Shown: positions 5,603 through 64,000 of the stretch, one piece after another | Layout: every line of letters starts with the position of its first letter | Position numbering within the stretch: position 1 is the stretch's first letter | IMG/VR virus record: IMGVR_UViG_3300030202_003189 | Location: 62,001 to 126,000 of that record | Direction: 5' to 3' (one strand) | Length of the DNA stretch: 64,000 nt | Position numbers and translations under genes: made by a program | Notes under the pieces: model-generated | Seen by the model: the letters and a program-made list of their open reading frames with translations, nothing else | What the model was told of the DNA's origin: nothing | Databases searched by the model: none

Positions 5603-5614
5603 TAAATAACTAAC

Positions 5615-5645
5615 ATAAAACCCACTCTGGTGGGTTTTATTTTTT
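5615..5645 (+). terminator. intrinsic terminator
   Basis: ATAAAACCCAC-TCTG-GTGGGTTTTAT followed by a T run. Confidence 0.85.
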
Positions 5646-5653
5646 CCCCCTTA

Positions 5654-5678
5654 TATTTATAATAAAAACAATATTTAT
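5654..5678 (+). promoter_or_regulatory. two putative late promoter elements (5654-5661, 5672-5678)
   Basis: TATTTATA and TATTTAT between the terminator and the protease ATG. Confidence 0.55.
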
Positions 5679-5682
5679 TAAT

Positions 5683-6372: not shown

Positions 6373-6376
6373 AATT

Positions 6377-7588: not shown

Positions 7589-7589
7589 T

Positions 7590-8366
7590 ATGAATTTAAT
7601 AGAAAATATAAAAAAAGAATTAAGATTATTAACTGAGCAAAGCTCTTGGTGGACAACTATGACCTCATGGGCAACAGCAGCAGATGCAGTTAATACTTCA
7701 AATGCACCAGCCACTTCAGATCCAAATACTCCTGCAGCCCCAGGTGTAACAGGTTCATACTCTTCAAATGGTGTGTGTTTTGATTCAGCAGCTAGTACGT
7801 GTCAATTAAATAATAGTTTATCTCACACTCAGAAATGGAATCAATATGTTGCCTGTTTAGATCCTTATGCAACTCCTTGTACTTTAGGTACGAAAGTACA
7901 ACAGGGGACTCCCGGATATAATTCTCAATACGCAGGACAACAGTTATGTATTACACATACCGCTCCCTCCAATGTGACAGGGGGATATTCGCCATATGAA
8001 ATACTTGAACTTAATTCTCCTGATTGTGCAATTGCATCAACTCCATGTGACACAACACCATCTTCACCATGTGCACAACAGTGGTTCCAAAACCCTAACG
8101 CGACATGGGCATCAACTTGGATAACTAATAGAGATTGTTCAAATTACAATTGGCCATCAATTAATTTAGAACAACAAGCAATGGATATAATGAATGACCC
8201 AACAACTCCAAACCCACAAAGTGGTCCTTTTAATAATTGGAATGACATATGGTCAGCAGGTAACGTCGCATGGCCAAATACTACAGGAGCTCCTAAAACC
8301 CAATTCATTGCAAAAATGGCGAAAGCTAAATATGCGCAATGTCAAATACAAGCATGTAACTGTTAA
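7590..8366 (+). CDS. Cys-rich putative internal head protein
   Basis: Leader MNLIENIKKELRLLTEQ; C-terminus AKMAKAKYAQCQIQACNC resembles ARKTEQRDWAQCQAAECGC of the 3442 ORF. Confidence 0.7.
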   Translation: MNLIENIKKELRLLTEQSSWWTTMTSWATAADAVNTSNAPATSDPNTPAAPGVTGSYSSNGVCFDSAASTCQLNNSLSHTQKWNQYVACLDPYATPCTLGTKVQQGTPGYNSQYAGQQLCITHTAPSNVTGGYSPYEILELNSPDCAIASTPCDTTPSSPCAQQWFQNPNATWASTWITNRDCSNYNWPSINLEQQAMDIMNDPTTPNPQSGPFNNWNDIWSAGNVAWPNTTGAPKTQFIAKMAKAKYAQCQIQACNC

Positions 8367-10334: not shown

Positions 10335-10359
10335 CACATTTATAAAAAATAATTAAAAA

Positions 10360-12349: not shown

Positions 12350-13261
12350 TTATAAACAACTTAGATATCTATTTCCTCTATCACAGAGTATGGTAATTCC
12401 CTCTCTTTCGTTATTGTCTCTTAACCATTGAAAGGTTGCCATTACATTCGCACCTCCACTAATACCAATAAACAAACCATAGTTTTTAGCTAGGTGTTTA
12501 GTAATACTTTTCGCACATTCGGTCTTGATGACTCGTATGTCATCAACTAAATCTAAATCGACTAAGAACTTACTACCATCACCAATACCTTGTATCCCAT
12601 GTAATCCAACTTCCCCTCCACTCATTACTGGAGATTCTGCTGGCTCCACGGCAACAATTTTTATATCTTCCCATTTTTCTTTTAGAAATTTACGAGTTCC
12701 CATTAAGGTACCACCAGTACCTGTCCCAGCAACAAAAACTGCAGGAGAATCATTTCTCCTATAACTTCCCCTCTCTTTAGGTAAAGACCAATCCTCATAG
12801 ATTTCTGGTCCAGTAGTTTGATAATGAGCCTCAATGTTTAAGGGATTATGAAATTGATTACAATTAAACCAACCATTTCGTTTACAAAGATTATCTCTAA
12901 GTTCGATAGCCCCATCAAAATCTCCTTCATCTACTTCTATTAATGTCGCCCCATAATACTTAAACATTTTTTTACGTTCCTCGGACATATTTGATGGCAT
13001 AATAATTACCATTTTATAACCTCTTTCTGACGCTAACATAGCAAACGCAATGCCACTATTACCACTAGTTGCTTCACATATCGTACTGTTTTTTTGGATA
13101 ACACCTTTTTGTTGGGCATCATTAAGTATAAAAGATGCCATACGGTCTTTTACAGAGCCAGAAGGGTTCATAAATTCAGCTTTACCCCAAACGGTAAGGT
13201 TACCTAAAGTAATAGGGATTAACGGTGTTTTACCAATGTGGTCAGATAATTTCATATTCAT
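12350..13261 (-). CDS. cysK: cysteine synthase / O-acetylserine sulfhydrylase family (PLP-dependent)
   Basis: IGKTPLI, NPSGSVKDR (PLP lysine), EATSGNSG, GTGTGGT, HGIQGIG, GISGGAN, CDRGNRYLS. Confidence 0.9.
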   Translation of the reverse strand: MNMKLSDHIGKTPLIPITLGNLTVWGKAEFMNPSGSVKDRMASFILNDAQQKGVIQKNSTICEATSGNSGIAFAMLASERGYKMVIIMPSNMSEERKKMFKYYGATLIEVDEGDFDGAIELRDNLCKRNGWFNCNQFHNPLNIEAHYQTTGPEIYEDWSLPKERGSYRRNDSPAVFVAGTGTGGTLMGTRKFLKEKWEDIKIVAVEPAESPVMSGGEVGLHGIQGIGDGSKFLVDLDLVDDIRVIKTECAKSITKHLAKNYGLFIGISGGANVMATFQWLRDNNEREGITILCDRGNRYLSCL

Positions 13262-21706: not shown

Positions 21707-22372
21707 TTACATTCCATTTAATAACTCAAAAACCGCGTCTATTGCTTCATGACGATGGTTATCAGTTAATAATGATTTATATACGAATTTTGACGTAGAT
21801 ATTTTTGGTACCTCATGTATCGCAGAGTAATTTTTATCTTTAAGATCAATCTGTTGGTTATCCCCAGTAAATATCATAGTGGAATTCTTACCCAACCTAC
21901 TTAATACCATAGATAACTGAGATTTAGTTAAGTTTTGAAATTCGTCGATAATACACACACTGTCCTCAAAAGTTCTTCCTCTAAAGTGAGCCAACGAAAC
22001 CAACTCAATCTGCTCCTCCCTTTCCATTTTATCAAGAATAGGTGGTTTATTATAAACCTTTCTCATATTCGATCTAATCGGTACCAACCAAGGTTCCATT
22101 TTTTCTCTTTCAGAACCAGGTAAAAATCCATTATCTTCTGTAGAGACCGTTGGTCTAGTGATAATGATTTTATTACATTGTTTCTTAAAGAATTGGTCAA
22201 GTGCGATTTGTACCGCTAATAATGTCTTACCACTACCCGGTTTTCCAACAATAAAATTAAAAGGGTGTTTCAGTATTTCTGTTTTGGCCTTTTTTTGTTC
22301 CGGTGAAAGAGAAAGTGAAAATCTCACAGATCCCTTTGGTGGAGTTTTATCTTTATTATTTTTTGGTGACAT
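21707..22372 (-). CDS. phoH: PhoH-family ATPase
   Basis: GKPGSGKT, ITRP, GFLPG..EKM.PW, FRGRTF, IIDEFQN, SRLG, GD..QIDL. Confidence 0.93.
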   Translation of the reverse strand: MSPKNNKDKTPPKGSVRFSLSLSPEQKKAKTEILKHPFNFIVGKPGSGKTLLAVQIALDQFFKKQCNKIIITRPTVSTEDNGFLPGSEREKMEPWLVPIRSNMRKVYNKPPILDKMEREEQIELVSLAHFRGRTFEDSVCIIDEFQNLTKSQLSMVLSRLGKNSTMIFTGDNQQIDLKDKNYSAIHEVPKISTSKFVYKSLLTDNHRHEAIDAVFELLNGM

Positions 22373-37403: not shown

Positions 37404-40400
37404 ATGGCGATACAAAATTACGGTTTTAATAATCTAGATGCAAAGATAAGTAACGATTCTTATTGGGACTTTTTCCTTTCTTCGGACCAAAGGGACTTCA
37501 ACCAAGAAGTAATATACTCAACAGAGATAATAAGTTATAGTGCTCAAACTAGTTTATTTAGTAATTCATTCTACTCAACTAGATTACCCATCTATATGGA
37601 TCTAAATGATCCAGAGTGTTCCCCTCAACTTGAGATTGGTACTTTGGCAACTCATGACCAGGGTGGAATTTTAACAATTAGTTTGGGTGGTGCAGATGTT
37701 AATAGAACTGCTGGACTCTACCACATTACCTCAACTTGTTCAGATACTTTAGGTGTCCAACCAACTGCGATGTTTAGTCTCGCTAATGGTGTAGTTGGGT
37801 GTGGGGCATCATTCTATCTTGTGGTGGACGGAGCTGGGGCTGCAACATTAAGTGGAAGCTCAGCTTACTTCAATTCAATTACTGGAGGGTACGGATATAA
37901 GGTTGGAGACATTCTAACAATACCCGATTCAAATTTAGGAGGGGGAGGTGCGGTTGATTTGGTAATTACGGTTGCTTCTGTTACAACTAGTACCGTAATT
38001 AATGGAGGAAGATTTCTTTCGGGAAATACTCTTTTAAGTAAAATGGCTTGGAATTATGCTTCGGTGACAGACTCACAAGAAATTATTGATATTGGATTAA
38101 CCGGTTTAGATAACGCATTGACTCCAACATTCACAGGACACTCATTAAATTTAGCCACAAGTATTCCAACAACACCAGAAGATTATACCTTCGAACCCTC
38201 ATGGTATGATTATAGAATGAAAATGAAACAGGTTAGTGGGTATACATCATTTTGGGATAAACGAACTAATGGTGAAATATTAACTTTTAGTGTGAGTGTT
38301 GGAGGTACTAATGTTAATAGACCAGCAGGGACCTATACGGTAAATTATGGGAATTATACTACGACGTCAACAGATGGAATTAACGCATCATTTTCAATAG
38401 TAGTTGACGGTAACGGTGTGACTTCCGTTGAAGATATCACAATACAGGATGCTGGTAATTATTATCTAGTTAATGATCAGATTGCAATCCCGGATGCGAT
38501 GTTAGGTGATGCAGCAACAGGAGGTAACCTAACAATAACAATAGATACTGTTAGTACAGGGGTAATAGATGGAACTATAACATATCCAATTAGGTCTGAC
38601 TTTGACAGAAGTGGATTTTTCTATCAACTATATGGAGGATGGTTCCAAGGATTCTATAACTTCTTTAGTTACGGTTACCAAGTTTTACCAAAAAGAATGG
38701 ATAAAGGGTGGACGGTAGAATGTTTATTAAAGGTTCGTTCATCAGGTTCTAGTTGGAATAATGAGAAGGTTGTTAATTTGAATAACTTATACCCAGATAA
38801 TGAAGGTATATTCTTTTATTATGGAGCTCGATCTGAAAATAAATTTTGGAATTGTTATGGTGGAGAAACAGGATACACGATTTCAAATAATGTAACTGCT
38901 TTGTATAATTGTACTGGTTCGTGTAAATATACTGGAGTATCTGCAGACACTTGTCAAAGTGCACAAAATTTTAGTTGTGCCGATGGTACGTGTACGGATG
39001 AAGTTAGTTGTATAGACCCTAACCAATGTAATTCAACTTGGGCCTATAATGGAACCAATACAGGATGGACTTATGATGACCAGATGTTTAGTGGAGATTT
39101 CTACACAAGTGCACAAACCGAATATCAAATAATGAGTAATAACTTTGCACTAAGATTAAGTGGTGGACCAGAATATGGTGGTTATAAATTAGGTTATCGG
39201 GCATTACGTTTTACTGGAGACACTGCGATAACTGGAACAAGTGATAGTTTTGCTTGTTCAGGTGGTACCTATGCAACTGGATTTACTATAGAAGAACAAT
39301 ATTCTCCACTTCAAATATGTACAGGTAATACCAAAGATTCATGGATTAAGGTAGATGCTGTTTTCAAACGTAACAACTTCTATGGTACAGACTTAGAAAA
39401 ATTATGGAGAGGAGGGACAAATTTAATAACAACGCTAACTTGTGAGGAAGAAACCTTTGAGATGTCTGGGTCGAGTGCAACAACAACAAATGTTATTGAG
39501 GGTGAAAAATTATTTATACAAAACATTGCATGGACAGGGGATAAATCAAACAGAATAGGAACCTTAACTCTTTACGCAAACTCTAGACCAGTACTTGTAG
39601 TGGAGAATTTTGAGGAAATTATACCTCGTAGACTTAATGAATTACCCCCAAAGCAACTTGCAGAGCCCTTTAATATGAGTTTTGGTGGTGGGTCTCAAGG
39701 ATTATACGACTCGTTAACATTGAGTGGGACTCCAGGAGAAGCTGCGGTCTTATGGGGACAAAGTTTTACCCAAACTGCATTACTAAATGGATTACGAGAC
39801 TGGCAACCAATGATTAAAGGACACATATGGAGTATGGAAGAACCTAACTCACCAGAACCGACATGGACCGCCGGTGTGTATGCACCGATTGCGGTAACTA
39901 GTGACGCACCAGGGGTGGGATACGGGGCTAATATTTCAATAACCATTGACGCTACAGGTAATATGGTTGTATCTCCTATTGCGGGAAGTTTAGGTGTTGG
40001 ATTTCAAGACGGAGATATCATAACCGTTCCAGTTGCTCAATTTGGTGGGACAGGCCCTAATGCCGAAATAGAAGTAACTCAAACTAATAATGGTACAATA
40101 ACTTTTAATGATGCTACAGGAGGGGATAATGTTACATTGGATACCACTACCAGTGTCTATGGAAATCAGATAGCAAAATTATATTATAAAGAGTATAGGG
40201 CACCCGCATTAAATGATTCTGGAGTCCTTGAGTCTAGCGGTTATCAACGTCCTGTGGTTGAAGGAGAAACTTATGATATCTTTTTACGAGGGTATGGGGT
40301 AAGTGGAACAACTTCTATTGATATGGGGTTCTCTGCGACCACAGCTAGTACTTCCCCATTTAATCAACCTTACCCAACAGGGCCAGAGGTTACTTATGTA

Positions 40401-41174
40401 TTTAAGGATTTTTCTTTACCTACAGTAATTACTGGTAATACTTCTTTTTATAAATCATATAAAGCAACTTTAACTGGAAATTTATTTGTCGGAATAACCC
40501 CTGGAAGTATAGGTAAGGTTGTTCTAGAAAGTGTGGTAGTATCTAGGCAAGCTTATAGGAGAGATCTTGCCGATGAAAGTATGTTAATAGAAAAACATTT
40601 TGGTGGATCATATATGGGAGGTATTTCGCAAATGAGATTTTATATCGAACCGTTGGATGCAAGTGAATTAATTCATAATTATTACACCAATAAGGAAAGG
40701 TACGGATTAATTGATTGTGACTGTGGTAATCTAGATACTCCAGTAGAGGGATGTGATACAGAGTATGCGATATTTACTTTTCCAATCGGTATTGATGAGG
40801 TCTCTTTAGACTTTGGTACTTTTAGGATGATAAGATGGGATTACACAGAAACAGAGAATGTATTAAGTTGGTCTGGAGTGACAAATTATCATGAAATACC
40901 AATAAGATATAGTTCAGTAGAACCCTACTGTACAGATCTTACCCAATACCAACCTTTCTTAACAGGGAGACCAATACTACATAAATGTTTAACACAAGCG
41001 GATTGTGAAGGGACTGGGTTTGGACAGTGTAATTCTACATGGAATACTAACGTTCCACCAATTAATAAATTCCCTTTCACGGTTGTTCCAAATAAACCAT
41101 TTACAATAAAGGTGACTCGTATTGTTCCAGGCAGTGAGGCAAAAATAACATTTACCGGAAAAAGGGTAAGGTAA
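37404..41174 (+). CDS. large virion structural protein (LamG/concanavalin-like frame with repeated inserted beta domains)
   Basis: 1256 aa; WTVECLLK, GTLTLYAN, YMGGISQMRFYIEPL..SELIHNY; three related inserts; Cys cluster. Confidence 0.65.
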   Translation: MAIQNYGFNNLDAKISNDSYWDFFLSSDQRDFNQEVIYSTEIISYSAQTSLFSNSFYSTRLPIYMDLNDPECSPQLEIGTLATHDQGGILTISLGGADVNRTAGLYHITSTCSDTLGVQPTAMFSLANGVVGCGASFYLVVDGAGAATLSGSSAYFNSITGGYGYKVGDILTIPDSNLGGGGAVDLVITVASVTTSTVINGGRFLSGNTLLSKMAWNYASVTDSQEIIDIGLTGLDNALTPTFTGHSLNLATSIPTTPEDYTFEPSWYDYRMKMKQVSGYTSFWDKRTNGEILTFSVSVGGTNVNRPAGTYTVNYGNYTTTSTDGINASFSIVVDGNGVTSVEDITIQDAGNYYLVNDQIAIPDAMLGDAATGGNLTITIDTVSTGVIDGTITYPIRSDFDRSGFFYQLYGGWFQGFYNFFSYGYQVLPKRMDKGWTVECLLKVRSSGSSWNNEKVVNLNNLYPDNEGIFFYYGARSENKFWNCYGGETGYTISNNVTALYNCTGSCKYTGVSADTCQSAQNFSCADGTCTDEVSCIDPNQCNSTWAYNGTNTGWTYDDQMFSGDFYTSAQTEYQIMSNNFALRLSGGPEYGGYKLGYRALRFTGDTAITGTSDSFACSGGTYATGFTIEEQYSPLQICTGNTKDSWIKVDAVFKRNNFYGTDLEKLWRGGTNLITTLTCEEETFEMSGSSATTTNVIEGEKLFIQNIAWTGDKSNRIGTLTLYANSRPVLVVENFEEIIPRRLNELPPKQLAEPFNMSFGGGSQGLYDSLTLSGTPGEAAVLWGQSFTQTALLNGLRDWQPMIKGHIWSMEEPNSPEPTWTAGVYAPIAVTSDAPGVGYGANISITIDATGNMVVSPIAGSLGVGFQDGDIITVPVAQFGGTGPNAEIEVTQTNNGTITFNDATGGDNVTLDTTTSVYGNQIAKLYYKEYRAPALNDSGVLESSGYQRPVVEGETYDIFLRGYGVSGTTSIDMGFSATTASTSPFNQPYPTGPEVTYVFKDFSLPTVITGNTSFYKSYKATLTGNLFVGITPGSIGKVVLESVVVSRQAYRRDLADESMLIEKHFGGSYMGGISQMRFYIEPLDASELIHNYYTNKERYGLIDCDCGNLDTPVEGCDTEYAIFTFPIGIDEVSLDFGTFRMIRWDYTETENVLSWSGVTNYHEIPIRYSSVEPYCTDLTQYQPFLTGRPILHKCLTQADCEGTGFGQCNSTWNTNVPPINKFPFTVVPNKPFTIKVTRIVPGSEAKITFTGKRVR

Positions 41175-41609: not shown

Positions 41610-44501
41610 ATGGCTTGTAAATGTACACAAACAACGGTTAATGCAACTGCAGGGGGATCCACTACTGCGGCTTTAAGTGCCTGTACCTATCCCTTATGGA
41701 TAAGTATGTTAAGTGGATGTACCGCGGGACTCCCAGCAACTAATACACAGAGTGATGTTTTAATATCAAACCCTTCTGCAAATATTGTATTTAATACAGG
41801 ATATCCAGAAGGTTGTAATGATAGTTATACAACTTGTAATCAATACGTAAATAATATCGGTATAAATGAAACTAGACCACAACATACCTTATCAATAGGA
41901 GGAACTTTAGATGTTAGGGACTATGTACATTTTAGTCGTGGAGACACAGCTTCCCTTACTGGAGGTTCAAAACAGAGTGTTTATTTAGGTTTTAATGCTG
42001 GTCGTACAAGAATGAGCAACGCGAATTCATACGGGAATACTGCTGTTGGGTACTCGTCTGTAGGAGGAGCAGGAGTACTAAACGGATCCATATATAACAC
42101 CGGTATTGGTGCATATGCTCTTAATGATCTAACATCAGGAGATAAAAATACAGTCATAGGAGCTAACGCAGGAGCAGATATTACAACTGGTGTGAATAAC
42201 ACATTTTTAGGAACTGATGTAGCCTATCAATCGACGAGTACAGGAAATAGAAATGTTTACCTAGGATATGGACAGGGATATCAAACTGGAAATGTATCTG
42301 ATGAATTACGAATAGGTGCAGCAGAAGCAGCTTCTTGGAATAGAAAACCATTAATACAAGGAAACTTTGCAACTTCAGCAATGACAGTTAATGGAAGTCT
42401 TGAACTTGAAGGTACTTTAACTGGAAAAGGTGATGGTAATACTGGGGGTAATGAATATGTTTCAGTAGTTGGTGGCGTACTGTCAACTGGTATAGTACGA
42501 TCACCTAATTTGAATTTCGTTGAGCCGGCAAAATCTTTATATATCGGACCCACTTCTGGTTTGCATTCCGGACAAACAACTGACGTACAAAATACAAGTA
42601 TAGGATTTGAAGCAATGTCGGCACTTGGATTTGCGGGAGACGTTTTTAGTAATGTTGCGGTAGGATATCGAGCACTGTACCAAGCCGGATTGGCAAATGC
42701 GGTTTCTAGTTCAAATACTGCTGTAGGTAATAACGCATTAAAAGTTGTTGCTAATGGTACAAATAATGTTGCAATAGGTACTAATGCTATCGCAAATGCA
42801 CCCAATGGTACGGTCGACAATGTTGCAATAGGTGTAAGATCTCTTTTTGGTGCAACCGGGGCCAAATCAGGTAATGTTTCAATCGGTACTTCGGCTATGA
42901 TGGGATTGGAGGGGGAAAGATATAACACTGCGGTAGGACAAGACTCATTAAGTACCACCGCATCAGGAAGTGAGAATACAGCTATTGGGTATCAGGCAGG
43001 TGCTGAAGTTGCCGATCTTTCAGATTTTAATGTTTTGATTGGTGGTCACGCTGGACAAAATGGTGCTAGTACTTATAAGGGTGCAACTTTCGTAGGTTAC
43101 GGTACTGCGACCGGAGCAACAACATCAAGTTCCAATATTGCAATAGGTTATAACGCTCAAATACCTTATAGTGAAAATCACTTCATGAATATTGGTGATA
43201 TTATTTATGCAAGAAAAGGTTTTAATGGAGCGTTTGGTCCAGATACCATTTTACTAGGAAGGGATGCTTACACTAGTGGTGTAGGGATTGCTACTTATAC
43301 GGTTGGTGTAGTTGGTGCGTTAAGTGCAACAGGGGCAATACACTCAACAGATTATATTAAATTCCCTAATGTATCAGAATCTATGTGTATGGGATACCAA
43401 TGTGGTACTGGGGCAACAACTGAACTTAGGAATACTGTGATAGGGTACCAATCAATGGGGTTCTTAGGGTCTGGTTCAGACGCTTATGACAATACCGCTG
43501 TCGGGTACCGAACTCTGCGATGGACTTCAAATGGAGGATATAGAAATACCGCCATCGGATCTGGAGCATTACAGTTCAGTAACAATGGATATGAGTCTAC
43601 CGCTATTGGTGCTAGTTCCCTTAATGCACATACGGAATCACAGGGTAATACTTCAATAGGTTCTAGATCAATGTATTGGGCAAATAATGTTGAAATAGAA
43701 AATAACACCGTGGTTGGGGCTTATGCTTGGTATGGGTCGTTTGGGGCGGTAACTACAGGAAAACATAATACTATAGTGGGGTCTTTTGCCTGTCAAACTG
43801 CAAATAACCTAGGAGATTATAATGTTTATCTTGGGGGTTACTCTAATAGTAATGCAACAGCGACCGGTAAGGGTAATGTTTTTATGGGTTATGGTACCGC
43901 AACAGGTGCCACAACAAATAATGACGTAATATTACTTGGTTATAATGCTCAACCAGGTGCCGCTGTTGACCACCATATGAATCTAGGTGATGTTATTTAT
44001 GCGTCTCCAGGATCCACAACTGGAAGTAGTGGTAGAAAGGCTGTTGGAATAAATGTTCCTACACCATTAACCGCTCTTGACGTAAAATATGATAACGTTG
44101 TATCTTTAGCGTCAGATAAAGGTGGTGGTAGTGATATTGTTACGTTTGGTAGTGCTGGTGTTGGATATGCCGCAAATACACTAGTACAACTAAGAGGAAC
44201 TGATAATTGGGTTAAGGCAGACGCGGACCACACCACTTTACAAGGTAATTTAATTGGTATTGCAATGGGTGCGGCTCCTGAAGCTGGGATTTTATTAAAA
44301 GGTTATTATAATGTAACAACGGCAGATGATATAACAACTTGGGCGAATGGTGGTCCAGTATACGTTTCAACGAGTGCCGGTAAAGTAACGGAATCCATAG
44401 CGACACACGGGGCAGGAGATTATATTAGGCTTATGGGTTATATGACAACCACTGCTAATATTATATACTTTAACCCAGATAATACATTTGTAGTGTTATA
44501 A
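41610..44501 (+). CDS. fibre/spike protein with trimeric beta-roll (NTAVG-type) repeats
   Basis: Many N-[TV]-[AS]-[IV]-G repeats in three blocks; distinct C-terminal cap domain. Confidence 0.75.
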   Translation: MACKCTQTTVNATAGGSTTAALSACTYPLWISMLSGCTAGLPATNTQSDVLISNPSANIVFNTGYPEGCNDSYTTCNQYVNNIGINETRPQHTLSIGGTLDVRDYVHFSRGDTASLTGGSKQSVYLGFNAGRTRMSNANSYGNTAVGYSSVGGAGVLNGSIYNTGIGAYALNDLTSGDKNTVIGANAGADITTGVNNTFLGTDVAYQSTSTGNRNVYLGYGQGYQTGNVSDELRIGAAEAASWNRKPLIQGNFATSAMTVNGSLELEGTLTGKGDGNTGGNEYVSVVGGVLSTGIVRSPNLNFVEPAKSLYIGPTSGLHSGQTTDVQNTSIGFEAMSALGFAGDVFSNVAVGYRALYQAGLANAVSSSNTAVGNNALKVVANGTNNVAIGTNAIANAPNGTVDNVAIGVRSLFGATGAKSGNVSIGTSAMMGLEGERYNTAVGQDSLSTTASGSENTAIGYQAGAEVADLSDFNVLIGGHAGQNGASTYKGATFVGYGTATGATTSSSNIAIGYNAQIPYSENHFMNIGDIIYARKGFNGAFGPDTILLGRDAYTSGVGIATYTVGVVGALSATGAIHSTDYIKFPNVSESMCMGYQCGTGATTELRNTVIGYQSMGFLGSGSDAYDNTAVGYRTLRWTSNGGYRNTAIGSGALQFSNNGYESTAIGASSLNAHTESQGNTSIGSRSMYWANNVEIENNTVVGAYAWYGSFGAVTTGKHNTIVGSFACQTANNLGDYNVYLGGYSNSNATATGKGNVFMGYGTATGATTNNDVILLGYNAQPGAAVDHHMNLGDVIYASPGSTTGSSGRKAVGINVPTPLTALDVKYDNVVSLASDKGGGSDIVTFGSAGVGYAANTLVQLRGTDNWVKADADHTTLQGNLIGIAMGAAPEAGILLKGYYNVTTADDITTWANGGPVYVSTSAGKVTESIATHGAGDYIRLMGYMTTTANIIYFNPDNTFVVL

Positions 44502-56563: not shown

Positions 56564-56603
56564 TTACACTAAAAAAGCCTTTGTACTTTGATAAAAATCA
56601 GAG

Positions 56604-56610
56604 TATTTAT
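56604..56610 (+). promoter_or_regulatory. putative late promoter element TATTTAT (tail sheath)
   Basis: 43 nt before ATG at 56654. Confidence 0.5.
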
Positions 56611-56653
56611 TATAAAACCAAGAATAACAATAAATTAAAAAATAAAGAAACAC

Positions 56654-59470
56654 ATGGCAAATCAAGTAGTAGTATCACCAGGAGTATATACATCAGAAAA
56701 AGATCTTTCTTTTGTCGCATCCAGTGTAGGGATAACAAGATTAGGGGTATCAGCAGAGACACTAAAAGGACCGGCTAACCAACCTATTTTCGTACAAGAC
56801 TATGACACATACCAAACTTATTTTGGTGGACAAGACCCATCTGTATGGACAGTAGGGAGTACTTTAATACCTAAGTATGAAGGAACATATATCGCTAGAT
56901 CTTATCTAAGTGAATCAAATAATCTTTGGATGACAAGAACTCTAGGTCTTAGTGGATATGACGCAACCGAGGCTTTAGTTATAAATGTAGGTGAGGGTAA
57001 TATGGACGCAACTCAAGCGACACAACAAACAAATACTGCTGGAGGTATCCAATCGGATAAAAGATTTTCAGCTATGACAGCCTGTGTTATTAGAGTAAGA
57101 AAAAAACAAGGTGTTACATTTACTCAACCAAATTTTGCTGTACAAATATTAAGAGTAGGGACAGCACCAGGAATGATAGAGGTTGCGGATGGACAATGGG
57201 TACCTAATGGAATTAATGGAGGAAGTTCAGCTACAGGTATTGCGAGTACTACTAATATACAACCACCAGCTAACGCACAAAATGCAGTTTGGAGTACAGC
57301 TGCGGATGACTTCGTTATACAAACTATGAGGTTAGGTGGTGTAATAAGAGATACTTATGTTGTTAGTTTCAACCCAAACAGTAATAACTACATAACAAAA
57401 GTTCTAGGAACTAATCCATACTATGACTCTACAAATAATAGTGAGGCTAGAATATATGTTGAACAATTCTACCCTAAAGCGATACAACAGTTAGGTAAAG
57501 AATGGGGTGGTACAGCAGGAAACAGTTATCTTGATGGTTTACCACACATGACTTGGTATAACGTACCTTCAGGATGGAGTAATTATACTGACACTTGGCA
57601 ACCAATTGCAACAACAGACGGACCAACTACTCCATGGATTTATTCTGAAGTTAGAGGTCTTGACGTAGAAAAATTATTTAGACTTATTTCTATCGGTGAT
57701 GGTAATGCCGCAAATAAAAACATTAAAACATCTTTCCTTAATTTAGATATTGATAATAAAACTTTTGATATTGCAATTAGATCATATGACGATACCGACG
57801 CTAAACAATCAGTATTAGAGAGTTTCAAGAATTGTAGTATGAACCCAGTTAGTCAAAATTATATTGGTAAAAAAATTGGTACATTAAACGGAGAATATGC
57901 TTTAAGATCAAGATATGTAATGGTTGAAATTGATGACAACGCACCAATAGATGCGTTACCATCAGGATATAAAGGATACCCAACTACAGATGGACCTAAT
58001 ATGAGTGGGGTTACTAATTTCCAAGGGTCTACTTTTAGTACGTTTGAAGATGCACTTCATTCACGTATCCAACCAGATGTGTATTATAATTTAAGTTATG
58101 ATACAGTTAATGACAATGTTAGAAAAACTTATCTAGGTCTTTCTGATAAGATGGGATATGACCAAAACTTATTTAATTACATGGGGTGTGCTACTGTTAG
58201 AGGTACTACTTGTGCTACAGCTTGGACAGGACACACATACGGTTTCCACTTAGATACAAGAGTTTCTGGGTCAACTTTCTTAGGTGATACAAATTTATCA
58301 GATGGAAAACAATGGTTCTCAGGTTCAGTTGGGACATTCCCATTTTATGTTAATTCCGTTGACTATGTTAACGATCCATACTATGGACCTGGATCAGAGG
58401 CACTAGCGGCTAATTCAAAAAACGCATATTACCAGAAGAAATATAGAAAATTTACCGTGGCATTTTATGGTGGTTTTGATGGTTGGGATGTGAGTAGAGC
58501 TAGTAGAACAAATACAGATAGTTGGAGAGAGAATCAAGCGGCGGGATATAATTTAGGGTACGGTAGTGGTACTACAGGACCATATCTTGGAGCTTATACT
58601 TTTAATAAGAACACTGACTGGTATGCTTATTATAACGCAATACAAAAGTTTGCTAATCCAGAAGAGGTTGATATAAATCTTTTTGCAACACCTGGTATCG
58701 ACTACACTAATAATTTAACATTAGTTAATGATACTATTGAGATGGTTGAAGATGATAGAGCTGATTCACTATATATCCTTACTTCAGAGAATTATAAGGA
58801 CCAAACAGTGGATAATGCGGTAGACGCTTTAGAAGACTCAAGTATCTCTAGTAATTATGTTGCGACTTACTGGCCATGGATACAATTTAACGATGTTGAA
58901 AACAACGTAAGGATATACATTCCACCAACTAATGAAGTTTTAAGAAATATGGCGATTACAGATAATGTATCCTTCCCATGGTTCGCAACTGCTGGTTACA
59001 ATAGAGGAATAATAAAAGCTAATAAGGTAAGAATAAATCTAACACAAGATAATAGAGACGACCTATATGAAGCTAGACTAAACCCAATTGCGACATTTAC
59101 AGCGACTGGACCGGTTATTTGGGGTAATAAAACATTACAAACAGCAATGTCGGCACTTGATAGGATTAATGTTAGAAGATTACTTCTTAGAGCTAGAAAA
59201 TTAGTTTCAGCAGTGGCGGTTAGACTAGTATTTGAACAAAATGATGAAATAGTAAGACAAGAATTCTTAAGTTTAGTAAATCCAATTCTAGAAGATATTA
59301 GAAGAGATAGAGGATTAACAGACTTTAAGGTTGTTCTTTCTAATGACCCAGAAGAAATTGATCAAAACAAGTTGACAGGTAAGATTTATATTAAACCAAC
59401 TAGATCTTTAGAGTTTATCGAAATAGAATTTAATATCACACCAACAGCAACAAGTTTTGACGATATATAA
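56654..59470 (+). CDS. gp18: tail sheath protein 1, T4 gp18-like
   Basis: SPGVYTSEKD, KGP, YWPW, PWFATAGYNRG, RDDLY..RLNPI, WGNKTLQ...SALDRINVRRL, IKPTRSLEFI. Confidence 0.93.
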   Translation: MANQVVVSPGVYTSEKDLSFVASSVGITRLGVSAETLKGPANQPIFVQDYDTYQTYFGGQDPSVWTVGSTLIPKYEGTYIARSYLSESNNLWMTRTLGLSGYDATEALVINVGEGNMDATQATQQTNTAGGIQSDKRFSAMTACVIRVRKKQGVTFTQPNFAVQILRVGTAPGMIEVADGQWVPNGINGGSSATGIASTTNIQPPANAQNAVWSTAADDFVIQTMRLGGVIRDTYVVSFNPNSNNYITKVLGTNPYYDSTNNSEARIYVEQFYPKAIQQLGKEWGGTAGNSYLDGLPHMTWYNVPSGWSNYTDTWQPIATTDGPTTPWIYSEVRGLDVEKLFRLISIGDGNAANKNIKTSFLNLDIDNKTFDIAIRSYDDTDAKQSVLESFKNCSMNPVSQNYIGKKIGTLNGEYALRSRYVMVEIDDNAPIDALPSGYKGYPTTDGPNMSGVTNFQGSTFSTFEDALHSRIQPDVYYNLSYDTVNDNVRKTYLGLSDKMGYDQNLFNYMGCATVRGTTCATAWTGHTYGFHLDTRVSGSTFLGDTNLSDGKQWFSGSVGTFPFYVNSVDYVNDPYYGPGSEALAANSKNAYYQKKYRKFTVAFYGGFDGWDVSRASRTNTDSWRENQAAGYNLGYGSGTTGPYLGAYTFNKNTDWYAYYNAIQKFANPEEVDINLFATPGIDYTNNLTLVNDTIEMVEDDRADSLYILTSENYKDQTVDNAVDALEDSSISSNYVATYWPWIQFNDVENNVRIYIPPTNEVLRNMAITDNVSFPWFATAGYNRGIIKANKVRINLTQDNRDDLYEARLNPIATFTATGPVIWGNKTLQTAMSALDRINVRRLLLRARKLVSAVAVRLVFEQNDEIVRQEFLSLVNPILEDIRRDRGLTDFKVVLSNDPEEIDQNKLTGKIYIKPTRSLEFIEIEFNITPTATSFDDI

Positions 59471-59491
59471 CATAAATTAAAACTTTTATAG

Positions 59492-62400
59492 ATGGCAGAT
59501 CAGTCACCATTATCACCAGGAGTTTATGTATCAGAAAGAGAACTAAGCTTTAACGCACCAAGTATTGGTGCAACAACGTTGGCCACAGTTGGAGAAACCC
59601 TTAAGGGTCCAGCGCAACAACCAATATTCATTGAAGATTATAACGAATATAAAACATATTTTGGTGGGTTAGATACTACGGTTTTTTCTGGTAGTACTAG
59701 ATTAAAATACGGACAACAATATATTGCTAAGAATTGGTTGGCGGAATCAAACTCTATGTGGGCCGTACGTTCATTAGGATACTCTGGATATGATGCGGGA
59801 ACCGCTTGGAATATTTCATTAAACTACGTACCAACCACAAATAATGTGTTTAGATCATTTGGTGGGGGTGGTACTGACGGACACTATAACGGACTAACCC
59901 AAAGAGAATTAGGAGGAACAGGTATACCATATATGGCACCAGACGGTACAATAAGTGCAATGACACTATATAAACCAACTCAATACTCTTTCCCAAACAA
60001 TGCGGGAGCCACATCAGTACAGCCAGGTATGTATAGTGGAGGTACATGGGGATATAACGCAGATGCTGACGGAGGTTCGGCTATAAATGGTACACAATAT
60101 ACTAATGCAGGTGGAGGGGCCAACTTTGGTGCAAACTACCAATCAGCAATAGAGTTAGCTGTAATATTTTCTGCTACTACATATGGAGGGGCTGGTAAAT
60201 TAGTCGTAACAGGTAGTACAGGTGGGAATTCTTTTGCGGGACCATCATCAGAGGCAGCAGGACTTCCTTGGGTTTCAGAATTAACAACAACATCTTATCC
60301 TCTTTGTTTATTAAGTGCAACAACACTAGTAATAACTACGAACTCTTCAGTAGGGGGTGCTGATCCAACAGCATTTACCGCAGGAGGTTCTGAAGGATTT
60401 GAGAGTCCTAGAATAACAACAGGAAGTAACGCAACTACTTTCCCAACTATTCAGTGGAAACCAGCAATTTCAGTACATGATAATGGAGTTAACGCGTCTA
60501 ATGTATCACCAGCAAATATAATACACGCTGGAATGGGGTCAAGAGATGTCAATCCATTAGGTTATCCTGTAACAGGACACACTTTCCAACTAAATTGGAG
60601 GTACGGTAATTATATAGGTGCACATAGTGGAGGGACAACTGGATGGACAGCACAAACAACAGGGACCGTGTATACATGGTCGGCGGCAACTCAAGAAATG
60701 GTGGTCGGAACTCTAAGAAGTAGAGCAAAATATGCGGGTAATACTTATAGTACAAACACTGCGTATAATGGAGGTGCTTGGGGAGTCACAGACTACCAAT
60801 CTCCATCTTTTGGTAATAAGAGTGAATGTGATGGAACAGTTACTACGTGTCCTGAAAAACCATTTAGGACCATCAATACAACAAACTATAAAGAAGATTT
60901 TTATATATCTGGGTATACTAATGGTGCTTCTGTAAATTCACAATTCCTTTATAAGGTAAGTTTAGACCCTAACTCTCAGTGTTATATCACAAAAGTATTG
61001 GGTACAAAAAAACATAATAATTCTCGTCATTTATGGGTTGAAGACATTTATCCTAACACATTACTTAATTTAGCTTCTTCTGCTGTAACATTCTCAAACA
61101 TTAATCTAAATAAGGCAGACACATATAGAAATTATACAGAAACATGGCAACCATTAGGCGCTTTAGAAGGGCCAACAACTCCGTGGATTGTGTCTGAACT
61201 AATGGGTAGTACTCTACATAAGTTATTTAGAGTTATTTTAATACCAGATGGTAACGATGCAAATGAGTTGGTTAAAATATCTATACAAGATGTCGATGTC
61301 TTTACTAAAACTTTTACTCTTACTGTTAGAGAATTTAACGATAGCGATGCGTCCCAAAGAATATTAGAAGGATATACTAACTGTAGTATGAACCCAACAA
61401 GTCAAAACTACATTGGGAAGAAAATAGGAACGGAGAATGGGGAATACCCTGTTAGGTCACGATATATTATGTTGGAAATTGATGAAAACGCACCCATAAA
61501 CGCTCTTCCAAGCGGATTCCAAGGAATCGTCGTTAGAAGCTATAGTGGGTCAACTCATAGTAATGAAGTTTATCAAGACCCACCTGCACAAACAGAAATT
61601 GCAAATGATAGTGGATGGTATGGTAATGAATCACCAAAACCATTTTATAATTTAACTTATAATACAACATCTGACGATATTAAGAAAACTTACTTAGGGT
61701 GGTCCACTAAAAAAGGTATTGACCAAAATTATTTTAACTATAGAGGTCTTGAAACTCTAACAACTACGGCACCATATAAATGTGGTGCTAATGGAACATT
61801 ATGGACTGGAAGAACTAAAGGATTCCACTTTGATAAAAGAGTATCCGGATTAACAACAAGTGACGTACTTCAGTATGAGGTAGGGGCTTATAGTTTTTAC
61901 ACTAGTGGTAGTACAGGAACATTAGTAGGTGATAGTGGAAATTATTATCAAAATAAAGATTATTTGAAATTTACAGTTATTCCTTATGGTGGTTTTGATG
62001 GTTGGGATGAATATAGGATAACAAGAACAAATGCTGACACATATATAATAGGAGGGACAGACTACGGCACATTCTGGTATAATCAGAGTTTTACAACATC
62101 CACTTGTCAAGTAACTGATTATTATGCTTACTATGATGCCATGAGGAAACTAGCCAATCCAGAGGCGACACCAAGTAGCGTATTTACAACACCAGGTATA
62201 GATTATACAAATAATTTAACATTGGTTAATCGAGCAAAAGAAATGATAGAAAATGATAAAGGAGACTCGATTTATATTGTAACTTCAGATAACCCAAGAA
62301 ATCAAACAGTAGATGAAGCTGTAGATAATTTAGAAAACGCAGCATTAAATAGTAGTTATATGGCTACGTATTGGCCTTGGGTAAGGTATAACGATACTGA

Positions 62401-62974
62401 AAATAACGTAAGAATATATATTCCACCTACAGCTAATGTTGTTAGAAATTTAGCATTAACTGATAATGTATCATTCCCGTGGTTCGCAACAGCTGGTTAT
62501 AATAGAGGTAAACTGGATGTTGATAGGGCACAAACAAAACTAACTCAGATTAACAGAGACGACCTTTATGAGGCAAGAATAAACCCAATAGCCACATTTA
62601 ATGGTGCGGGGGTTATTATATGGGGAAATAAAACTTTACAAACAACACAATCAGCTTTAGATAGAATTAATGTAAGACGACTTATGTTAGACCTTAAAAC
62701 TAAAGTTAAAGATATAGGGTTACAATTATTATTTGAACAGAACGACGCTATTGTAAGACAACAATTCTTATCTTTAATTAATCCAGTTCTAGAAGAAGTA
62801 AGGGCAAATAGAGGATTAACAGATTTCAGGGTAGAACTAAATTCAGATGTTAACGAACTAGACACCAACTCTATGACAGGTAAAATATTTGTTAAACCAA
62901 CTAGAACACTTGAATTTATAGAAGTTGAGTTTAACATAACACCATCGAGTACATCATTCACTGACTTAACATAA
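59492..62974 (+). CDS. gp18: tail sheath protein 2, T4 gp18-like paralogue
   Basis: Same N- and C-terminal sheath motifs as sheath 1, with a longer distal insertion. Confidence 0.92.
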   Translation: MADQSPLSPGVYVSERELSFNAPSIGATTLATVGETLKGPAQQPIFIEDYNEYKTYFGGLDTTVFSGSTRLKYGQQYIAKNWLAESNSMWAVRSLGYSGYDAGTAWNISLNYVPTTNNVFRSFGGGGTDGHYNGLTQRELGGTGIPYMAPDGTISAMTLYKPTQYSFPNNAGATSVQPGMYSGGTWGYNADADGGSAINGTQYTNAGGGANFGANYQSAIELAVIFSATTYGGAGKLVVTGSTGGNSFAGPSSEAAGLPWVSELTTTSYPLCLLSATTLVITTNSSVGGADPTAFTAGGSEGFESPRITTGSNATTFPTIQWKPAISVHDNGVNASNVSPANIIHAGMGSRDVNPLGYPVTGHTFQLNWRYGNYIGAHSGGTTGWTAQTTGTVYTWSAATQEMVVGTLRSRAKYAGNTYSTNTAYNGGAWGVTDYQSPSFGNKSECDGTVTTCPEKPFRTINTTNYKEDFYISGYTNGASVNSQFLYKVSLDPNSQCYITKVLGTKKHNNSRHLWVEDIYPNTLLNLASSAVTFSNINLNKADTYRNYTETWQPLGALEGPTTPWIVSELMGSTLHKLFRVILIPDGNDANELVKISIQDVDVFTKTFTLTVREFNDSDASQRILEGYTNCSMNPTSQNYIGKKIGTENGEYPVRSRYIMLEIDENAPINALPSGFQGIVVRSYSGSTHSNEVYQDPPAQTEIANDSGWYGNESPKPFYNLTYNTTSDDIKKTYLGWSTKKGIDQNYFNYRGLETLTTTAPYKCGANGTLWTGRTKGFHFDKRVSGLTTSDVLQYEVGAYSFYTSGSTGTLVGDSGNYYQNKDYLKFTVIPYGGFDGWDEYRITRTNADTYIIGGTDYGTFWYNQSFTTSTCQVTDYYAYYDAMRKLANPEATPSSVFTTPGIDYTNNLTLVNRAKEMIENDKGDSIYIVTSDNPRNQTVDEAVDNLENAALNSSYMATYWPWVRYNDTENNVRIYIPPTANVVRNLALTDNVSFPWFATAGYNRGKLDVDRAQTKLTQINRDDLYEARINPIATFNGAGVIIWGNKTLQTTQSALDRINVRRLMLDLKTKVKDIGLQLLFEQNDAIVRQQFLSLINPVLEEVRANRGLTDFRVELNSDVNELDTNSMTGKIFVKPTRTLEFIEVEFNITPSSTSFTDLT

Positions 62975-62979
62975 TCACT

Positions 62980-63762
62980 ATGAGTAGAAAGTTATTATAT
63001 GAAATAACAATGAGAGCTTATAGTTTTGACTGGGATGATAATATTCTGCACATGCCAACCATGATTAACATGGAAAAAAGAATGGGTAATGGTTGGGAAT
63101 TGGTTAAATTAACAACTGGAGAATACGCGGAATTAAAAGATAATGAAGATTATAGATACCCAGAAGGGGACATTAGGAAAGCTTTTAGTGAGTTTGATGA
63201 CGACGAAGGATTTCTTAAGAATGTAGAAGACAGTCTAAGAAAAAAAGATTTTGCTCCAAGTTTTAACGACTTCAAAGAAGCAGTAATAAAGGCAAAACCA
63301 ATATCAATTATTACAGCGAGACCACAATCCCCAACAACTCTAAAGAAAGGAGTTTCAATGATAATTAATACTGATTTTAGTGATGAAGAAATCGATGAAA
63401 TGGTTAGAAATGTAGAAGAAAACTATGGATTTACTGGTGATTCAGATGAAATTATTGATAAATATATTGAATCAAACTACTATTACCCAGTTTCATTTAG
63501 GGATAGAAACGCCGATATTAAAAAAGGAAAGGGAGACGCTTTAGATAATTTTGTTGAAAATATTGTTAAATCTTTTGAAAAAATGGATAAAAAACTATAT
63601 AATAAAATGAGTGTTGGGTTTAGTGATGATGATGTAGACAACGTAGAAGAAATGATAAAAAAAGTAGAAAATGAAATGGCGGAAAAATATCCCGGAGTTA
63701 AATTTTTTATATATGATACCTCTGAAAGGGGTAAAAACAAATTAATAGTACATACAACTTAG
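62980..63762 (+). CDS. HAD-superfamily-like protein
   Basis: SFDWDDNI (DxD), IITAR, K, VGFSDDD. Confidence 0.65.
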   Translation: MSRKLLYEITMRAYSFDWDDNILHMPTMINMEKRMGNGWELVKLTTGEYAELKDNEDYRYPEGDIRKAFSEFDDDEGFLKNVEDSLRKKDFAPSFNDFKEAVIKAKPISIITARPQSPTTLKKGVSMIINTDFSDEEIDEMVRNVEENYGFTGDSDEIIDKYIESNYYYPVSFRDRNADIKKGKGDALDNFVENIVKSFEKMDKKLYNKMSVGFSDDDVDNVEEMIKKVENEMAEKYPGVKFFIYDTSERGKNKLIVHTT

Positions 63763-63781: not shown

Positions 63782-63789
63782 TATTTATA
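63782..63789 (+). promoter_or_regulatory. putative late promoter element TATTTATA (tail tube)
   Basis: 41 nt before ATG at 63831. Confidence 0.55.
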
Positions 63790-63830: not shown

Positions 63831-64000
63831 ATGGCAGACTTACTAATGAAAATGCCGGTTCCTTACGAACCAAAAAGAAAGAATCGGTTTATAATGAAAT
63901 TTCCTTCTGACTTAGGAATAGCAGAATGGATAGTATCTAGTGCGGCTAGACCATCAATAACAATTAACGAAGTTGAGATTCCATTTCTTAACACTAAAAC
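63831..64000 (+). CDS. tail tube protein (5' part, runs off the window)
   Basis: MADLLMKMPVPYEPKRKNRFIMKF...WIVSSAARPSITINEVEIPFLN; downstream of sheath. Confidence 0.75.
   Translation, partial: MADLLMKMPVPYEPKRKNRFIMKFPSDLGIAEWIVSSAARPSITINEVEIPFLNTK

What the first reader, a model, noticed from the sequence alone, without database searches (positions are those of the whole stretch)
56654..62974. Two full-length tandem tail sheath paralogues with different outer domains
Both keep all core motifs. Shared segments differ mostly at third codon positions (for example the DNVSFPWFATAGYNRG block), which suggests an old duplication under selection. The distal insertions are unrelated and sheath 2 carries far more S/T-G/A-x-T motifs. 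T4 has one sheath gene, while some contractile injection systems use several. Possible outcomes are a mosaic sheath, position-specific rings or alternative surface types.
Basis: partly seen in the sequence, partly recalled or inferred. Interest (0 to 1): 0.6.

Follow-up and report, generated by a model that had tools for sequence, protein, structure and literature searches.

The report
Duplicated tail sheath genes, marine phage
An uncultured marine jumbo phage and its relatives carry two adjacent, intact and selected copies of the contractile tail sheath gene, one with almost no outermost domain and one with a large orphan outer domain, so the tail is probably built from two subunit types; duplicated sheath genes are already known in other jumbo phages.

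Summary
Window 56654-59470 (S1, 938 aa) and 59492-62974 (S2, 1160 aa) are complete T4 gp18-type tail sheath genes 21 nt apart, in the tail module of a 231-kb IMG/VR phage record. S1 and S2 share 56% identity over 779 aligned codons (dN 0.39, dS about 1.4). In trees they are sister clades that exclude all single-sheath relatives, so there was one old tandem duplication. Every related contig that reaches far enough keeps both genes in the same order. Both are under purifying selection in every domain (omega 0.04-0.17 against close orthologues). I found no sign of gene conversion.

The main difference lies at one hypervariable site after residue ~105. S1 has about 40 residues there, single-sheath relatives mostly about 130, and S2 about 300. 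The S2 insert is G/S/T-rich and conserved, and it has no relatives among 1.84 billion representative proteins.

A conserved promoter-like element precedes S1 and none precedes S2. The genome record holds one tube gene. I infer co-expression and co-polymerisation into one sheath, but the arrangement of the two subunits is untested.

Two-sheath jumbo phages (PaBG) and multi-sheath injection systems are already published, so this is a new variant of a known kind.

The parts
56586..56620 (+). Conserved promoter-like element upstream of S1. It contains TATTTAT at 56604-56610.
   Evidence: TATTTAT is the 7-mer most enriched (12-fold) within 60 nt upstream of the genome's ORFs (46 of 185). The element is nearly identical in 8 orthologous loci even though coding dS exceeds 1. 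The function is inferred, not shown.
56654..59470 (+). S1, tail sheath paralogue 1 (938 aa, 'slim').
   Evidence: The AlphaFold model (mean pLDDT 68.6) has T4 gp18 as its best Foldseek match (9mkb, E 9.5e-20). Omega against orthologues is 0.04-0.15.
56990..57070 (+). S1 site A (aa 113-139): only a short loop where relatives carry an outer domain.
   Evidence: The distance from the GYDA anchor to the LRSR anchor is 31-54 aa in the S1 clade and 126-135 aa in most single-sheath relatives.
58601..59470 (+). S1 C-terminal sheath core (aa 650-938).
   Evidence: Pfam PF04984/PF17482. The profile matches T4 gp18 chains at E 1e-41 to 1e-43. It is 64% identical to the S2 core.
59471..59491 (+). 21-nt S1-S2 spacer with no TATTTAT element.
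   Evidence: The spacer is 21-28 nt and partly conserved in all orthologous loci.
59492..62974 (+). S2, tail sheath paralogue 2 (1160 aa, 'bulky').
   Evidence: Omega against the closest orthologue is 0.04-0.17. The AlphaFold core is confident and the insert is not.
59822..60694 (+). S2 site A insert (aa 111-401): an orphan, conserved outer domain rich in G, S, T and A.
   Evidence: 284-364 aa in all S2 orthologues, with 53 invariant columns. No Pfam match, no internal repeat, no similarity to site A of any other clade. No relatives among 1.84 billion representatives. pLDDT is under 50.
62099..62974 (+). S2 C-terminal sheath core (aa 870-1160).
   Evidence: Pfam PF04984/PF17482.
62980..63762 (+). 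Conserved 260-aa ORF between sheath and tube, with HAD-like motifs. Probably not structural.
   Evidence: No PHROG or Pfam hit. It is 36% identical to the ORF at the same position in a single-sheath relative. It is unrelated to the tube protein. The HAD reading rests only on the DWDDN motif, from my own knowledge.
63831..64000 (+). 5' part of the single tail tube gene (gp19-like, 162 aa). It runs off the window and is preceded by TATTTAT at 63782.
   Evidence: PHROG 4542 at E 3e-28. It is the only tube gene in the 231-kb record.

Best explanation
S1 and S2 come from one ancient tandem duplication of a T4 gp18-type sheath gene. The duplication happened in the ancestor of a clade of uncultured marine large or jumbo myophages.

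Shown here:
- Both copies are intact and keep the N-terminal arm, the C-terminal core and the C-terminal arm that link sheath subunits.
- Both are under purifying selection.
- The pair is retained, in the same order, in all relatives of the clade that could be checked.

Inferred:
- The two genes are transcribed together from the conserved element upstream of S1.
- Both polymerise on the single tube protein, so each tail has a sheath made of two subunit types.
- After the duplication the outermost insertion site diverged in opposite directions. S1 lost the ancestral outer domain (roughly 130 aa reduced to about 40). S2 acquired a conserved orphan domain of about 300 aa.
- The tail surface would therefore carry the S2 domain on only some lattice positions.
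- That domain most likely acts in adhesion or in stabilising the tail, as proposed for the extra domains of other sheath proteins.

Confidence by layer: about 0.9 that both are functional sheath subunits made by one duplication; about 0.6 that they co-assemble along one sheath. The pattern (ordered or random) is unknown.
For: Duplication:
- The S1 and S2 clades each have 100% support. They are sisters at 94/92 in the careful tree.
- In a 68-protein tree S1 and S2 together form one side of a branch at SH-aLRT 100.
- The S1 and S2 subtrees agree with each other.
- Relatives L020-L029 have one sheath gene within 8-kb flanks.

Both copies functional:
- Omega is 0.04-0.17 per domain against close orthologues.
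- 237 of 270 strongly conserved columns are identical between the two clades. Of the 33 fixed differences, 7 keep the outgroup state in S1 and 7 in S2.
- There is no gene conversion signal.

Co-expression:
- The TATTTAT element lies upstream of S1 only and is conserved in 8 loci. The gap between the genes is 21-28 nt.

Shared scaffold:
- The genome record has one tube gene.
- The tail-module synteny is sheath, tube, baseplate hub, gp25-like wedge.

Compatibility of the cores:
- Complex prediction on S1 640-938 with S2 862-1160 gave weak support only. The score was 0.59 against a best control of 0.01. In calibration the mark was reached by 58 of 80 solved complexes and 2 of 110 mismatched pairs, but a score of 0.60 or under came from only 7 of those 80 and from both mismatches that passed. 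Run-to-run contact agreement was at least 0%, and partner pLDDT was at least 77.

Precedent:
- Both sheath paralogues of phage PaBG were identified in its virion proteome (PMC7412058).
Against: The complex prediction is weak, and it is expected for any pair of sheath paralogues, possibly from the model's memory of solved sheaths, so it does not separate the hypotheses. Single-gene relatives manage alone with either a slim sheath (835 aa) or a bulky one (1186 aa), so there is no evident steric need for two subunit types. The fold and function of the S2 insert are unknown. The promoter reading rests on a motif only.
Confidence: 0.6

Rival explanations
1. Position-specific rings. One paralogue forms the bulk of the sheath. 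The other forms only one or a few rings next to the baseplate or the neck, as I recall for Pvc3/Pvc4 and Afp4 in extracellular contractile injection systems.
For: Multi-sheath injection systems exist. The AFP sheath is polymerised from Afp2, Afp3 and Afp4 (PMC12961389), and PDB entries for AFP, PVC and PlPVC1 with several sheath chains are among the hits. The 33 clade-specific fixed differences in the core could encode specific contacts.
Against: Both copies keep complete N-terminal and C-terminal arms and diverged symmetrically. The two genes are probably on one transcript, so nothing in the sequence indicates the large difference in amount that a minor ring subunit would need. None of this is decisive.
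Confidence: 0.22
2. Alternative sheaths. Individual virions use either S1 or S2, giving two tail surface types, for example for different hosts or conditions.
For: Single-sheath relatives show that a slim or a bulky sheath can work alone.
Against: I saw no switch, invertible element or separate promoter-like element. The spacer is 21-28 nt and conserved. With both proteins present in the same cell and 64% identical cores, sorting into pure homopolymers would need a specific mechanism.
Confidence: 0.08
3. One copy is no longer a sheath subunit. It could be a decaying duplicate or have been recruited to another role, such as a decoration or an assembly factor.
For: Only that the role of the S2 insert is unknown.
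Against: Both reading frames are intact in every orthologue. Omega is 0.04-0.1 in both cores. All family-invariant residues are kept in both.
Confidence: 0.05
4. Assembly artefact or chimera that created a false tandem repeat.
For: None found.
Against: The same arrangement occurs in 16 IMG/VR contigs from many samples and in Tara/ENA contigs. The two copies are only 63% identical in DNA.
Confidence: 0.01

Closest known systems
T4 gp18 tail sheath protein (Pfam Phage_sheath_1 / Phage_sheath_1C, PHROG 23)
   Same: The C-terminal core matches T4-type gp18 chains at E 1e-41 to 1e-43. The best structural match of the S1 model is T4 gp18. The gene sits next to a gp19-like tube gene and T4-like baseplate genes. 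Extra domains are inserted after about 100 N-terminal residues, which is where I recall T4 gp18 domain I being inserted; I did not align that region here.
   Different: T4 has one sheath gene of 659 aa. Here there are two, of 938 and 1160 aa. Only the C-terminal 290 residues or so are alignable to T4 by sequence.
Pseudomonas jumbo phage PaBG and its 'Lupandier' group: two tail sheath proteins (gp76, gp213)
   Same: Both are jumbo phages with two sheath paralogues that arose by duplication after the split from single-sheath relatives. In PaBG both proteins were found in the virion (PMC7412058). PMC9230969 states that some phage genomes encode two sheath copies.
   Different: The PaBG paralogues carry distant gene numbers (gp76 and gp213), are nearly equal in mass (57.9 and 58.5 kDa) and are 38% identical. 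Here the genes are adjacent, about 50-56% identical, and strongly unequal in the outer domain. The duplication here is specific to this marine T4-like clade. I did not place PaBG in a tree.
Extracellular contractile injection systems with several sheath proteins (AFP Afp2/3/4, PVC Pvc2/3/4, PlPVC1)
   Same: One contractile sheath is built from paralogous subunits of different size, with peripheral domains on some of them (PMC12961389; PMC8894136 extended data). They share the sheath core fold.
   Different: Those are tailocin-like particles of bacteria with much shorter sheath proteins (about 350-450 aa). Sequence similarity to S1 and S2 is marginal (E 1e-7 to 1e-4). The locus here is part of a phage genome with portal, capsid and DNA polymerase genes.
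Uncultured 484-kb megaphage LR756508.1
   Same: It is the best full-length hit in the phage collection (28% identity). It also has two full-length sheath genes about 1 kb apart.
   Different: Its paralogues are both 824 aa and only 29% identical. They lie outside the S1+S2 clade, so the duplication is probably separate, although those branches are long and their placement is unsure.

Membership tests
Contractile tail sheath protein, T4 gp18 type | C-terminal sheath domain (Pfam PF17482 Phage_sheath_1C) | tested here: met
   S1 scores 31.4 bits and S2 35.1 bits against a cut-off of 26.9.
Contractile tail sheath protein, T4 gp18 type | Subtilisin-like sheath domain (Pfam PF04984 Phage_sheath_1) | tested here: inconclusive
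   S1 scores 28.6 and S2 31.1 bits, just under the 31.4 cut-off. The precomputed Pfam annotation lists PF04984 for S2 and for the S1 orthologues. PHROG 23 matches at E 1e-55.
Contractile tail sheath protein, T4 gp18 type | N-terminal linker arm with the SPGVY..E motif used for strand exchange between subunits | tested here: met
   S8 P9 G10 V11 E15 L18 are invariant in both paralogues and in the family. The N-terminal profile aligns to the N-terminus of solved sheath proteins 8bky and 9ezm. The strand-exchange role comes from my own knowledge of pyocin and T4 structures.
Contractile tail sheath protein, T4 gp18 type | gp18-like fold | tested here: met
   The top Foldseek hits of the S1 model are T4 gp18 (9mkb, E 9.5e-20) and the KP1 sheath. 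The S2 model was not searched. Its core has the same secondary-structure order and pLDDT 70-94.
Contractile tail sheath protein, T4 gp18 type | Location in a tail module next to tube and baseplate genes | tested here: met
   The tube (PHROG 4542), baseplate hub (PF12322) and gp25-like wedge genes lie directly downstream.
Contractile tail sheath protein, T4 gp18 type | Polymerises around the tube and contracts | not testable with these tools
   This needs virions or recombinant protein.
Heteromeric (multi-paralogue) contractile sheath, as in AFP/PVC and presumably PaBG | Two or more paralogous full-length sheath genes in one genome or locus | tested here: met
Heteromeric (multi-paralogue) contractile sheath, as in AFP/PVC and presumably PaBG | Both paralogues present in the same particle | not testable with these tools
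   The only indirect evidence is the shared promoter-like element, the single tube gene and weak support from complex prediction (0.59 against a best control of 0.01).
Heteromeric (multi-paralogue) contractile sheath, as in AFP/PVC and presumably PaBG | Defined positions of each paralogue in the lattice | not testable with these tools
   This needs cryo-EM.

The most novel reading that the evidence does not exclude
The tail of this phage clade would be an ordered heteropolymer. Slim S1 and bulky S2 subunits would occupy fixed, alternating lattice positions enforced by the paralogue-specific residues in the arms and core. The orphan S2 domain would then form a periodic pattern of adhesive, and possibly glycosylated, projections along a phage sheath. 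The same window encodes a full nucleotide-sugar and glycosyltransferase cluster, and the S2 domain is rich in Ser and Thr. As far as I could find in the papers searched, no phage with an ordered two-subunit sheath has been structurally described.
Probability: 0.25. Interest if true: 0.65.

Novelty: new variant of a known kind. Interest (0 to 1): 0.42.

Why it matters
Contractile sheaths are usually treated as homopolymers in phages. Duplicated sheath genes have been reported in a few jumbo phages, but I found no structural description of how two paralogues share one lattice.

This clade offers a clean natural case. The duplication is single and datable. Both copies are selected. The outer domain went in opposite directions in the two copies, and single-gene sister lineages are available for comparison. 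It could show how new surface domains are tried out on a tail without disturbing the contraction machinery. It could also guide the engineering of sheath-displayed domains on phage tails and tailocins.

The weight is limited for three reasons: the phage is uncultured, the function of the orphan domain is unknown, and the general phenomenon is already in the literature.

Tried and rejected
- Near-identity DNA search of the phage collection found no match.
- Fold of the S2 insert: AlphaFold with a 67-row alignment gave pLDDT under 50 for residues 114-400. Pfam found nothing. The ESM Atlas feature search gave only unnamed clusters and holds no model. hhalign found no internal repeats. A profile search of 1.84 billion representatives found only the domain's own cluster plus two weak multi-stretch hits (E 9e-6 and 3e-4). 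I therefore ran no structure search on the insert.
- Homology of the S2 insert to the outer domains of other sheath clades: none by BLAST or hhalign. So I cannot say whether it is a diverged ancestral domain or a captured one.
- Gene conversion between S1 and S2: rejected. Pairs from the same genome are no more codon-identical than pairs from different genomes in any 40-codon window.
- The idea that a bulky subunit needs a slim partner for steric reasons: weakened. A relative with a 324-aa insert (1186 aa) has a single sheath gene, and so do slim 835-aa relatives.
- The 260-aa ORF as a second tube or a sheath accessory: no similarity to the tube and no structural family.
- Sigma-70 promoter and terminator scans were at background level.
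- Complex prediction gave only weak support (0.59 against a best control of 0.01), and a pass is expected for any sheath paralogues. It is cited under the main explanation with its calibration counts.
- Literature searches for a structurally resolved two-sheath phage found none.
Full report
**What is there**

The window is bases 62001-126000 of a 231,285-bp IMG/VR virus record estimated to be about 70% complete. It is a large or jumbo phage with about 34% G+C. It has T4-like portal and major capsid genes at the start of the window and a family-B DNA polymerase and a helicase upstream of the finding.

S1 is 56654-59470 (938 aa, P0001) and S2 is 59492-62974 (1160 aa, P0002), both on the + strand and 21 nt apart. 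Downstream come a 260-aa ORF, a 162-aa gp19-like tube gene that starts at window 63831, a T4-type baseplate hub gene, several very large ORFs and a gp25-like wedge gene. This is the tail module of a myophage.

**Are they sheath genes and paralogues?**

Both proteins match Pfam Phage_sheath_1C above its cut-off. Both fall just under the cut-off for Phage_sheath_1, and both match PHROG 23 'tail sheath' at E about 1e-55. A family profile matches T4-type gp18 chains at E 1e-41 to 1e-43. The AlphaFold model of S1 has T4 gp18 as its best structural match.

S1 and S2 align over residues 1-112 (55% identity) and over S1 218-938 / S2 468-1160 (50% identity). Both keep more than 100 columns that are invariant across the family. 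These include the N-terminal SPGVY..E arm, which also aligns to the N-terminus of solved sheath proteins.

**Age and mode of the duplication**

Over 779 shared codons the two paralogues are 56% identical in protein and 63% in DNA. dN is 0.39 and dS about 1.4, which is near saturation.

Sixteen related IMG/VR contigs (L005-L019, L028) have the same tandem pair wherever the contig reaches far enough. Nine more distant ones (L020-L027, L029) have one sheath gene within 8-kb flanks.

In a careful IQ-TREE analysis of 815 columns, the S1 and S2 clades each have 100% support. They are sisters at 94/92 to the exclusion of the single-sheath relatives, and the two subtrees agree with each other. In a 68-protein tree of the wider family, S1 and S2 together form one side of a branch with SH-aLRT 100. 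So there was one duplication in the ancestor of this clade.

There is no sign of later gene conversion. Pairs from the same genome are no more codon-identical than pairs from different genomes.

**Selection**

Against the closest orthologues (L005, L006), omega is 0.04-0.10 in the cores of both genes. It is 0.14 in the variable part of S1 and 0.17 in the S2 insert.

Of 270 columns conserved at 90% or more within both clades, 237 are identical between them and 33 are fixed differences. Among these differences S1 keeps the outgroup state seven times and S2 seven times. Neither copy is decaying, and the divergence is symmetric.

**The outer domains**

Profile comparison shows that a conserved strand (family consensus VVAxLRSRGxY) lies at S1 140-158 and S2 402-421. 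The informative variable is therefore the length between the GYDA anchor (about residue 103) and this strand, which I call site A.

| Group | Length of site A (aa) |
|---|---|
| S1 clade | 31-54 |
| S2 clade | 284-364 |
| Most single-sheath relatives | 126-135 |
| Other single-sheath lineages | 23-25, 195-252 or 324 |

Site A is a hotspot: the medium and long versions are unrelated to each other beyond their first 24 residues, and none resembles the S2 insert.

Relative to the commonest state, S1 has lost the outer domain and S2 has a new, larger one.

The S2 insert is rich in G, T, A and S. It has no repeats, no Pfam match and no Atlas lead. It could not be modelled (pLDDT under 50). It has no relatives outside its own cluster among 1.84 billion representative proteins.

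Even so, it has 53 invariant columns across 12 orthologues, including many Trp, Tyr, Gly and Pro residues and strand-like hydrophobic runs. It is also under purifying selection. I therefore take it to be a folded orphan domain. By position it should be the outermost part of the subunit. That is an inference from T4 gp18, where, as I recall, domain I is inserted after about residue 98 and points outward.

The excess of S/T-G/A-x-T motifs in S2 (18 against 7) is real, but 11 of the 18 lie in this compositionally biased insert.

**Expression signals**

The 7-mer most enriched upstream of genes in this genome is TATTTAT (46 of 185 ORFs, 12-fold). One copy lies 44 nt upstream of S1, inside a 35-nt element that is almost unchanged in eight orthologous loci although silent sites in the genes are saturated. 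There is none in the 21-28 nt S1-S2 spacer. The next copy on the + strand precedes the tube gene.

This suggests that S1, S2 and the 260-aa ORF form one transcription unit. It remains an inference from motifs.

**How it most likely works**

The genome record holds one tube gene. There are two sheath proteins with intact polymerisation elements and 64% identical cores, probably made together. The simplest reading is that both polymerise on the same tube and every tail carries both, so that the orphan S2 domain decorates only part of the sheath surface.

A complex prediction for the two C-terminal cores gave weak support: 0.59 against a best control of 0.01. In calibration the mark was reached by 58 of 80 solved complexes and 2 of 110 mismatched pairs, but a score of 0.60 or under came from only 7 of the 80 and from both mismatches that passed. 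Run-to-run contact agreement was at least 0%, and partner pLDDT was at least 77. Such a pass is expected for any sheath paralogues and may reflect the model's memory of solved sheaths, so it does not discriminate between arrangements.

Whether the subunits alternate, mix at random, or one is confined to a few rings cannot be decided from sequence. One argument against a steric necessity for a slim partner is that relatives with a slim sheath (835 aa) or a bulky one (1186 aa, 324-aa insert) each have a single sheath gene in the same synteny.

**Comparison with what is known**

Two tail sheath proteins are a published trait of Pseudomonas jumbo phage PaBG and its group. There the paralogues (38% identical, gp76 and gp213) arose by duplication, and both were identified in the virion proteome (PMC7412058). 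A survey of sheath evolution states that some phage genomes encode two sheath copies, and that extra domains, often Ig-like, sit away from the tube and may serve adhesion or stability (PMC9230969).

Extracellular contractile injection systems build their sheaths from two or three paralogues (PMC12961389).

The 484-kb megaphage LR756508.1, the best database hit, also has two sheath genes, each 824 aa and 29% identical to each other.

What is particular here is the combination of features: a tandem arrangement, a clean single origin within a T4-like marine lineage, and a complementary change of the outer domain, lost in one copy and replaced by a large orphan domain in the other. I found no paper that resolves how two sheath paralogues are arranged in a phage tail.

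**Verdict**

I rate it a new variant of a known kind, of moderate interest.

Noticed in passing
window 12350-37290, minus strand: A block of about 27 genes lies between the head genes and the virion genes. It looks like a complete nucleotide-sugar pathway plus glycosyltransferases. The Pfam hits are a UDP-GlcNAc 2-epimerase, a UDP-sugar dehydrogenase, a GFO/IDH/MocA oxidoreductase, a DegT aminotransferase, a hexapeptide acetyltransferase, a PP-loop protein, a HisF/HisH-like pair, an NAD epimerase/dehydratase, a methyltransferase, GT2 enzymes and a weak GT1 hit. The enzyme set resembles the WbpA/B/E/D/I route to 2,3-diacetamido-mannuronic acid; that comparison is from my own knowledge and was not tested. 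It could glycosylate virion proteins, such as the Ser/Thr-rich S2 domain, or remodel the host surface.
   Followed up: partly
whole genome G000; examples at window 50434, 54565, 54690, 56604, 63782: The heptamer TATTTAT is 12-fold enriched within 60 nt upstream of ORFs (46 of 185). It is embedded in a strongly conserved element upstream of S1. It is probably this phage group's promoter motif.
   Followed up: partly
L030 (LR756508.1) 5497-7971 and 8986-11460: The 484-kb uncultured megaphage also encodes two full-length 824-aa sheath paralogues, 29% identical and about 1 kb apart. It is probably a separate, older duplication.
   Followed up: partly
sheath family P0033-P0121; site A, after about residue 103: The outer insertion site of this marine sheath family ranges from 23 to 364 residues. 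It carries at least four mutually unrelated sequence types, so it is a hotspot for domain turnover.
   Followed up: partly
window 62980-63762 (+): A conserved 260-aa ORF sits between the sheath and tube genes and is also present in single-sheath relatives (36% identity). It starts with a DWDDN motif reminiscent of HAD phosphatases. An enzyme-like gene inside a tail module is odd.
   Followed up: partly
window 10360-12297 (+): The major capsid protein is 645 aa, but only residues 377-622 match capsid families. The N-terminal 370 residues or so are unexplained.
   Followed up: no
window 37404-41174 and 41610-44501 (+); L004 6733-11007 and 11332-19572: There are very large ORFs of 1256, 963, 1424 and 2746 aa in or near the tail module. 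Most have no family match. The 963-aa one matches virion structural and tail spike PHROGs.
   Followed up: no
window 21707-22372 (-) and 12350-13261 (-): A PhoH-like gene and a PLP-dependent (PALP family) enzyme sit among the auxiliary genes. PhoH is typical of marine phages, which I state from my own knowledge.
   Followed up: no
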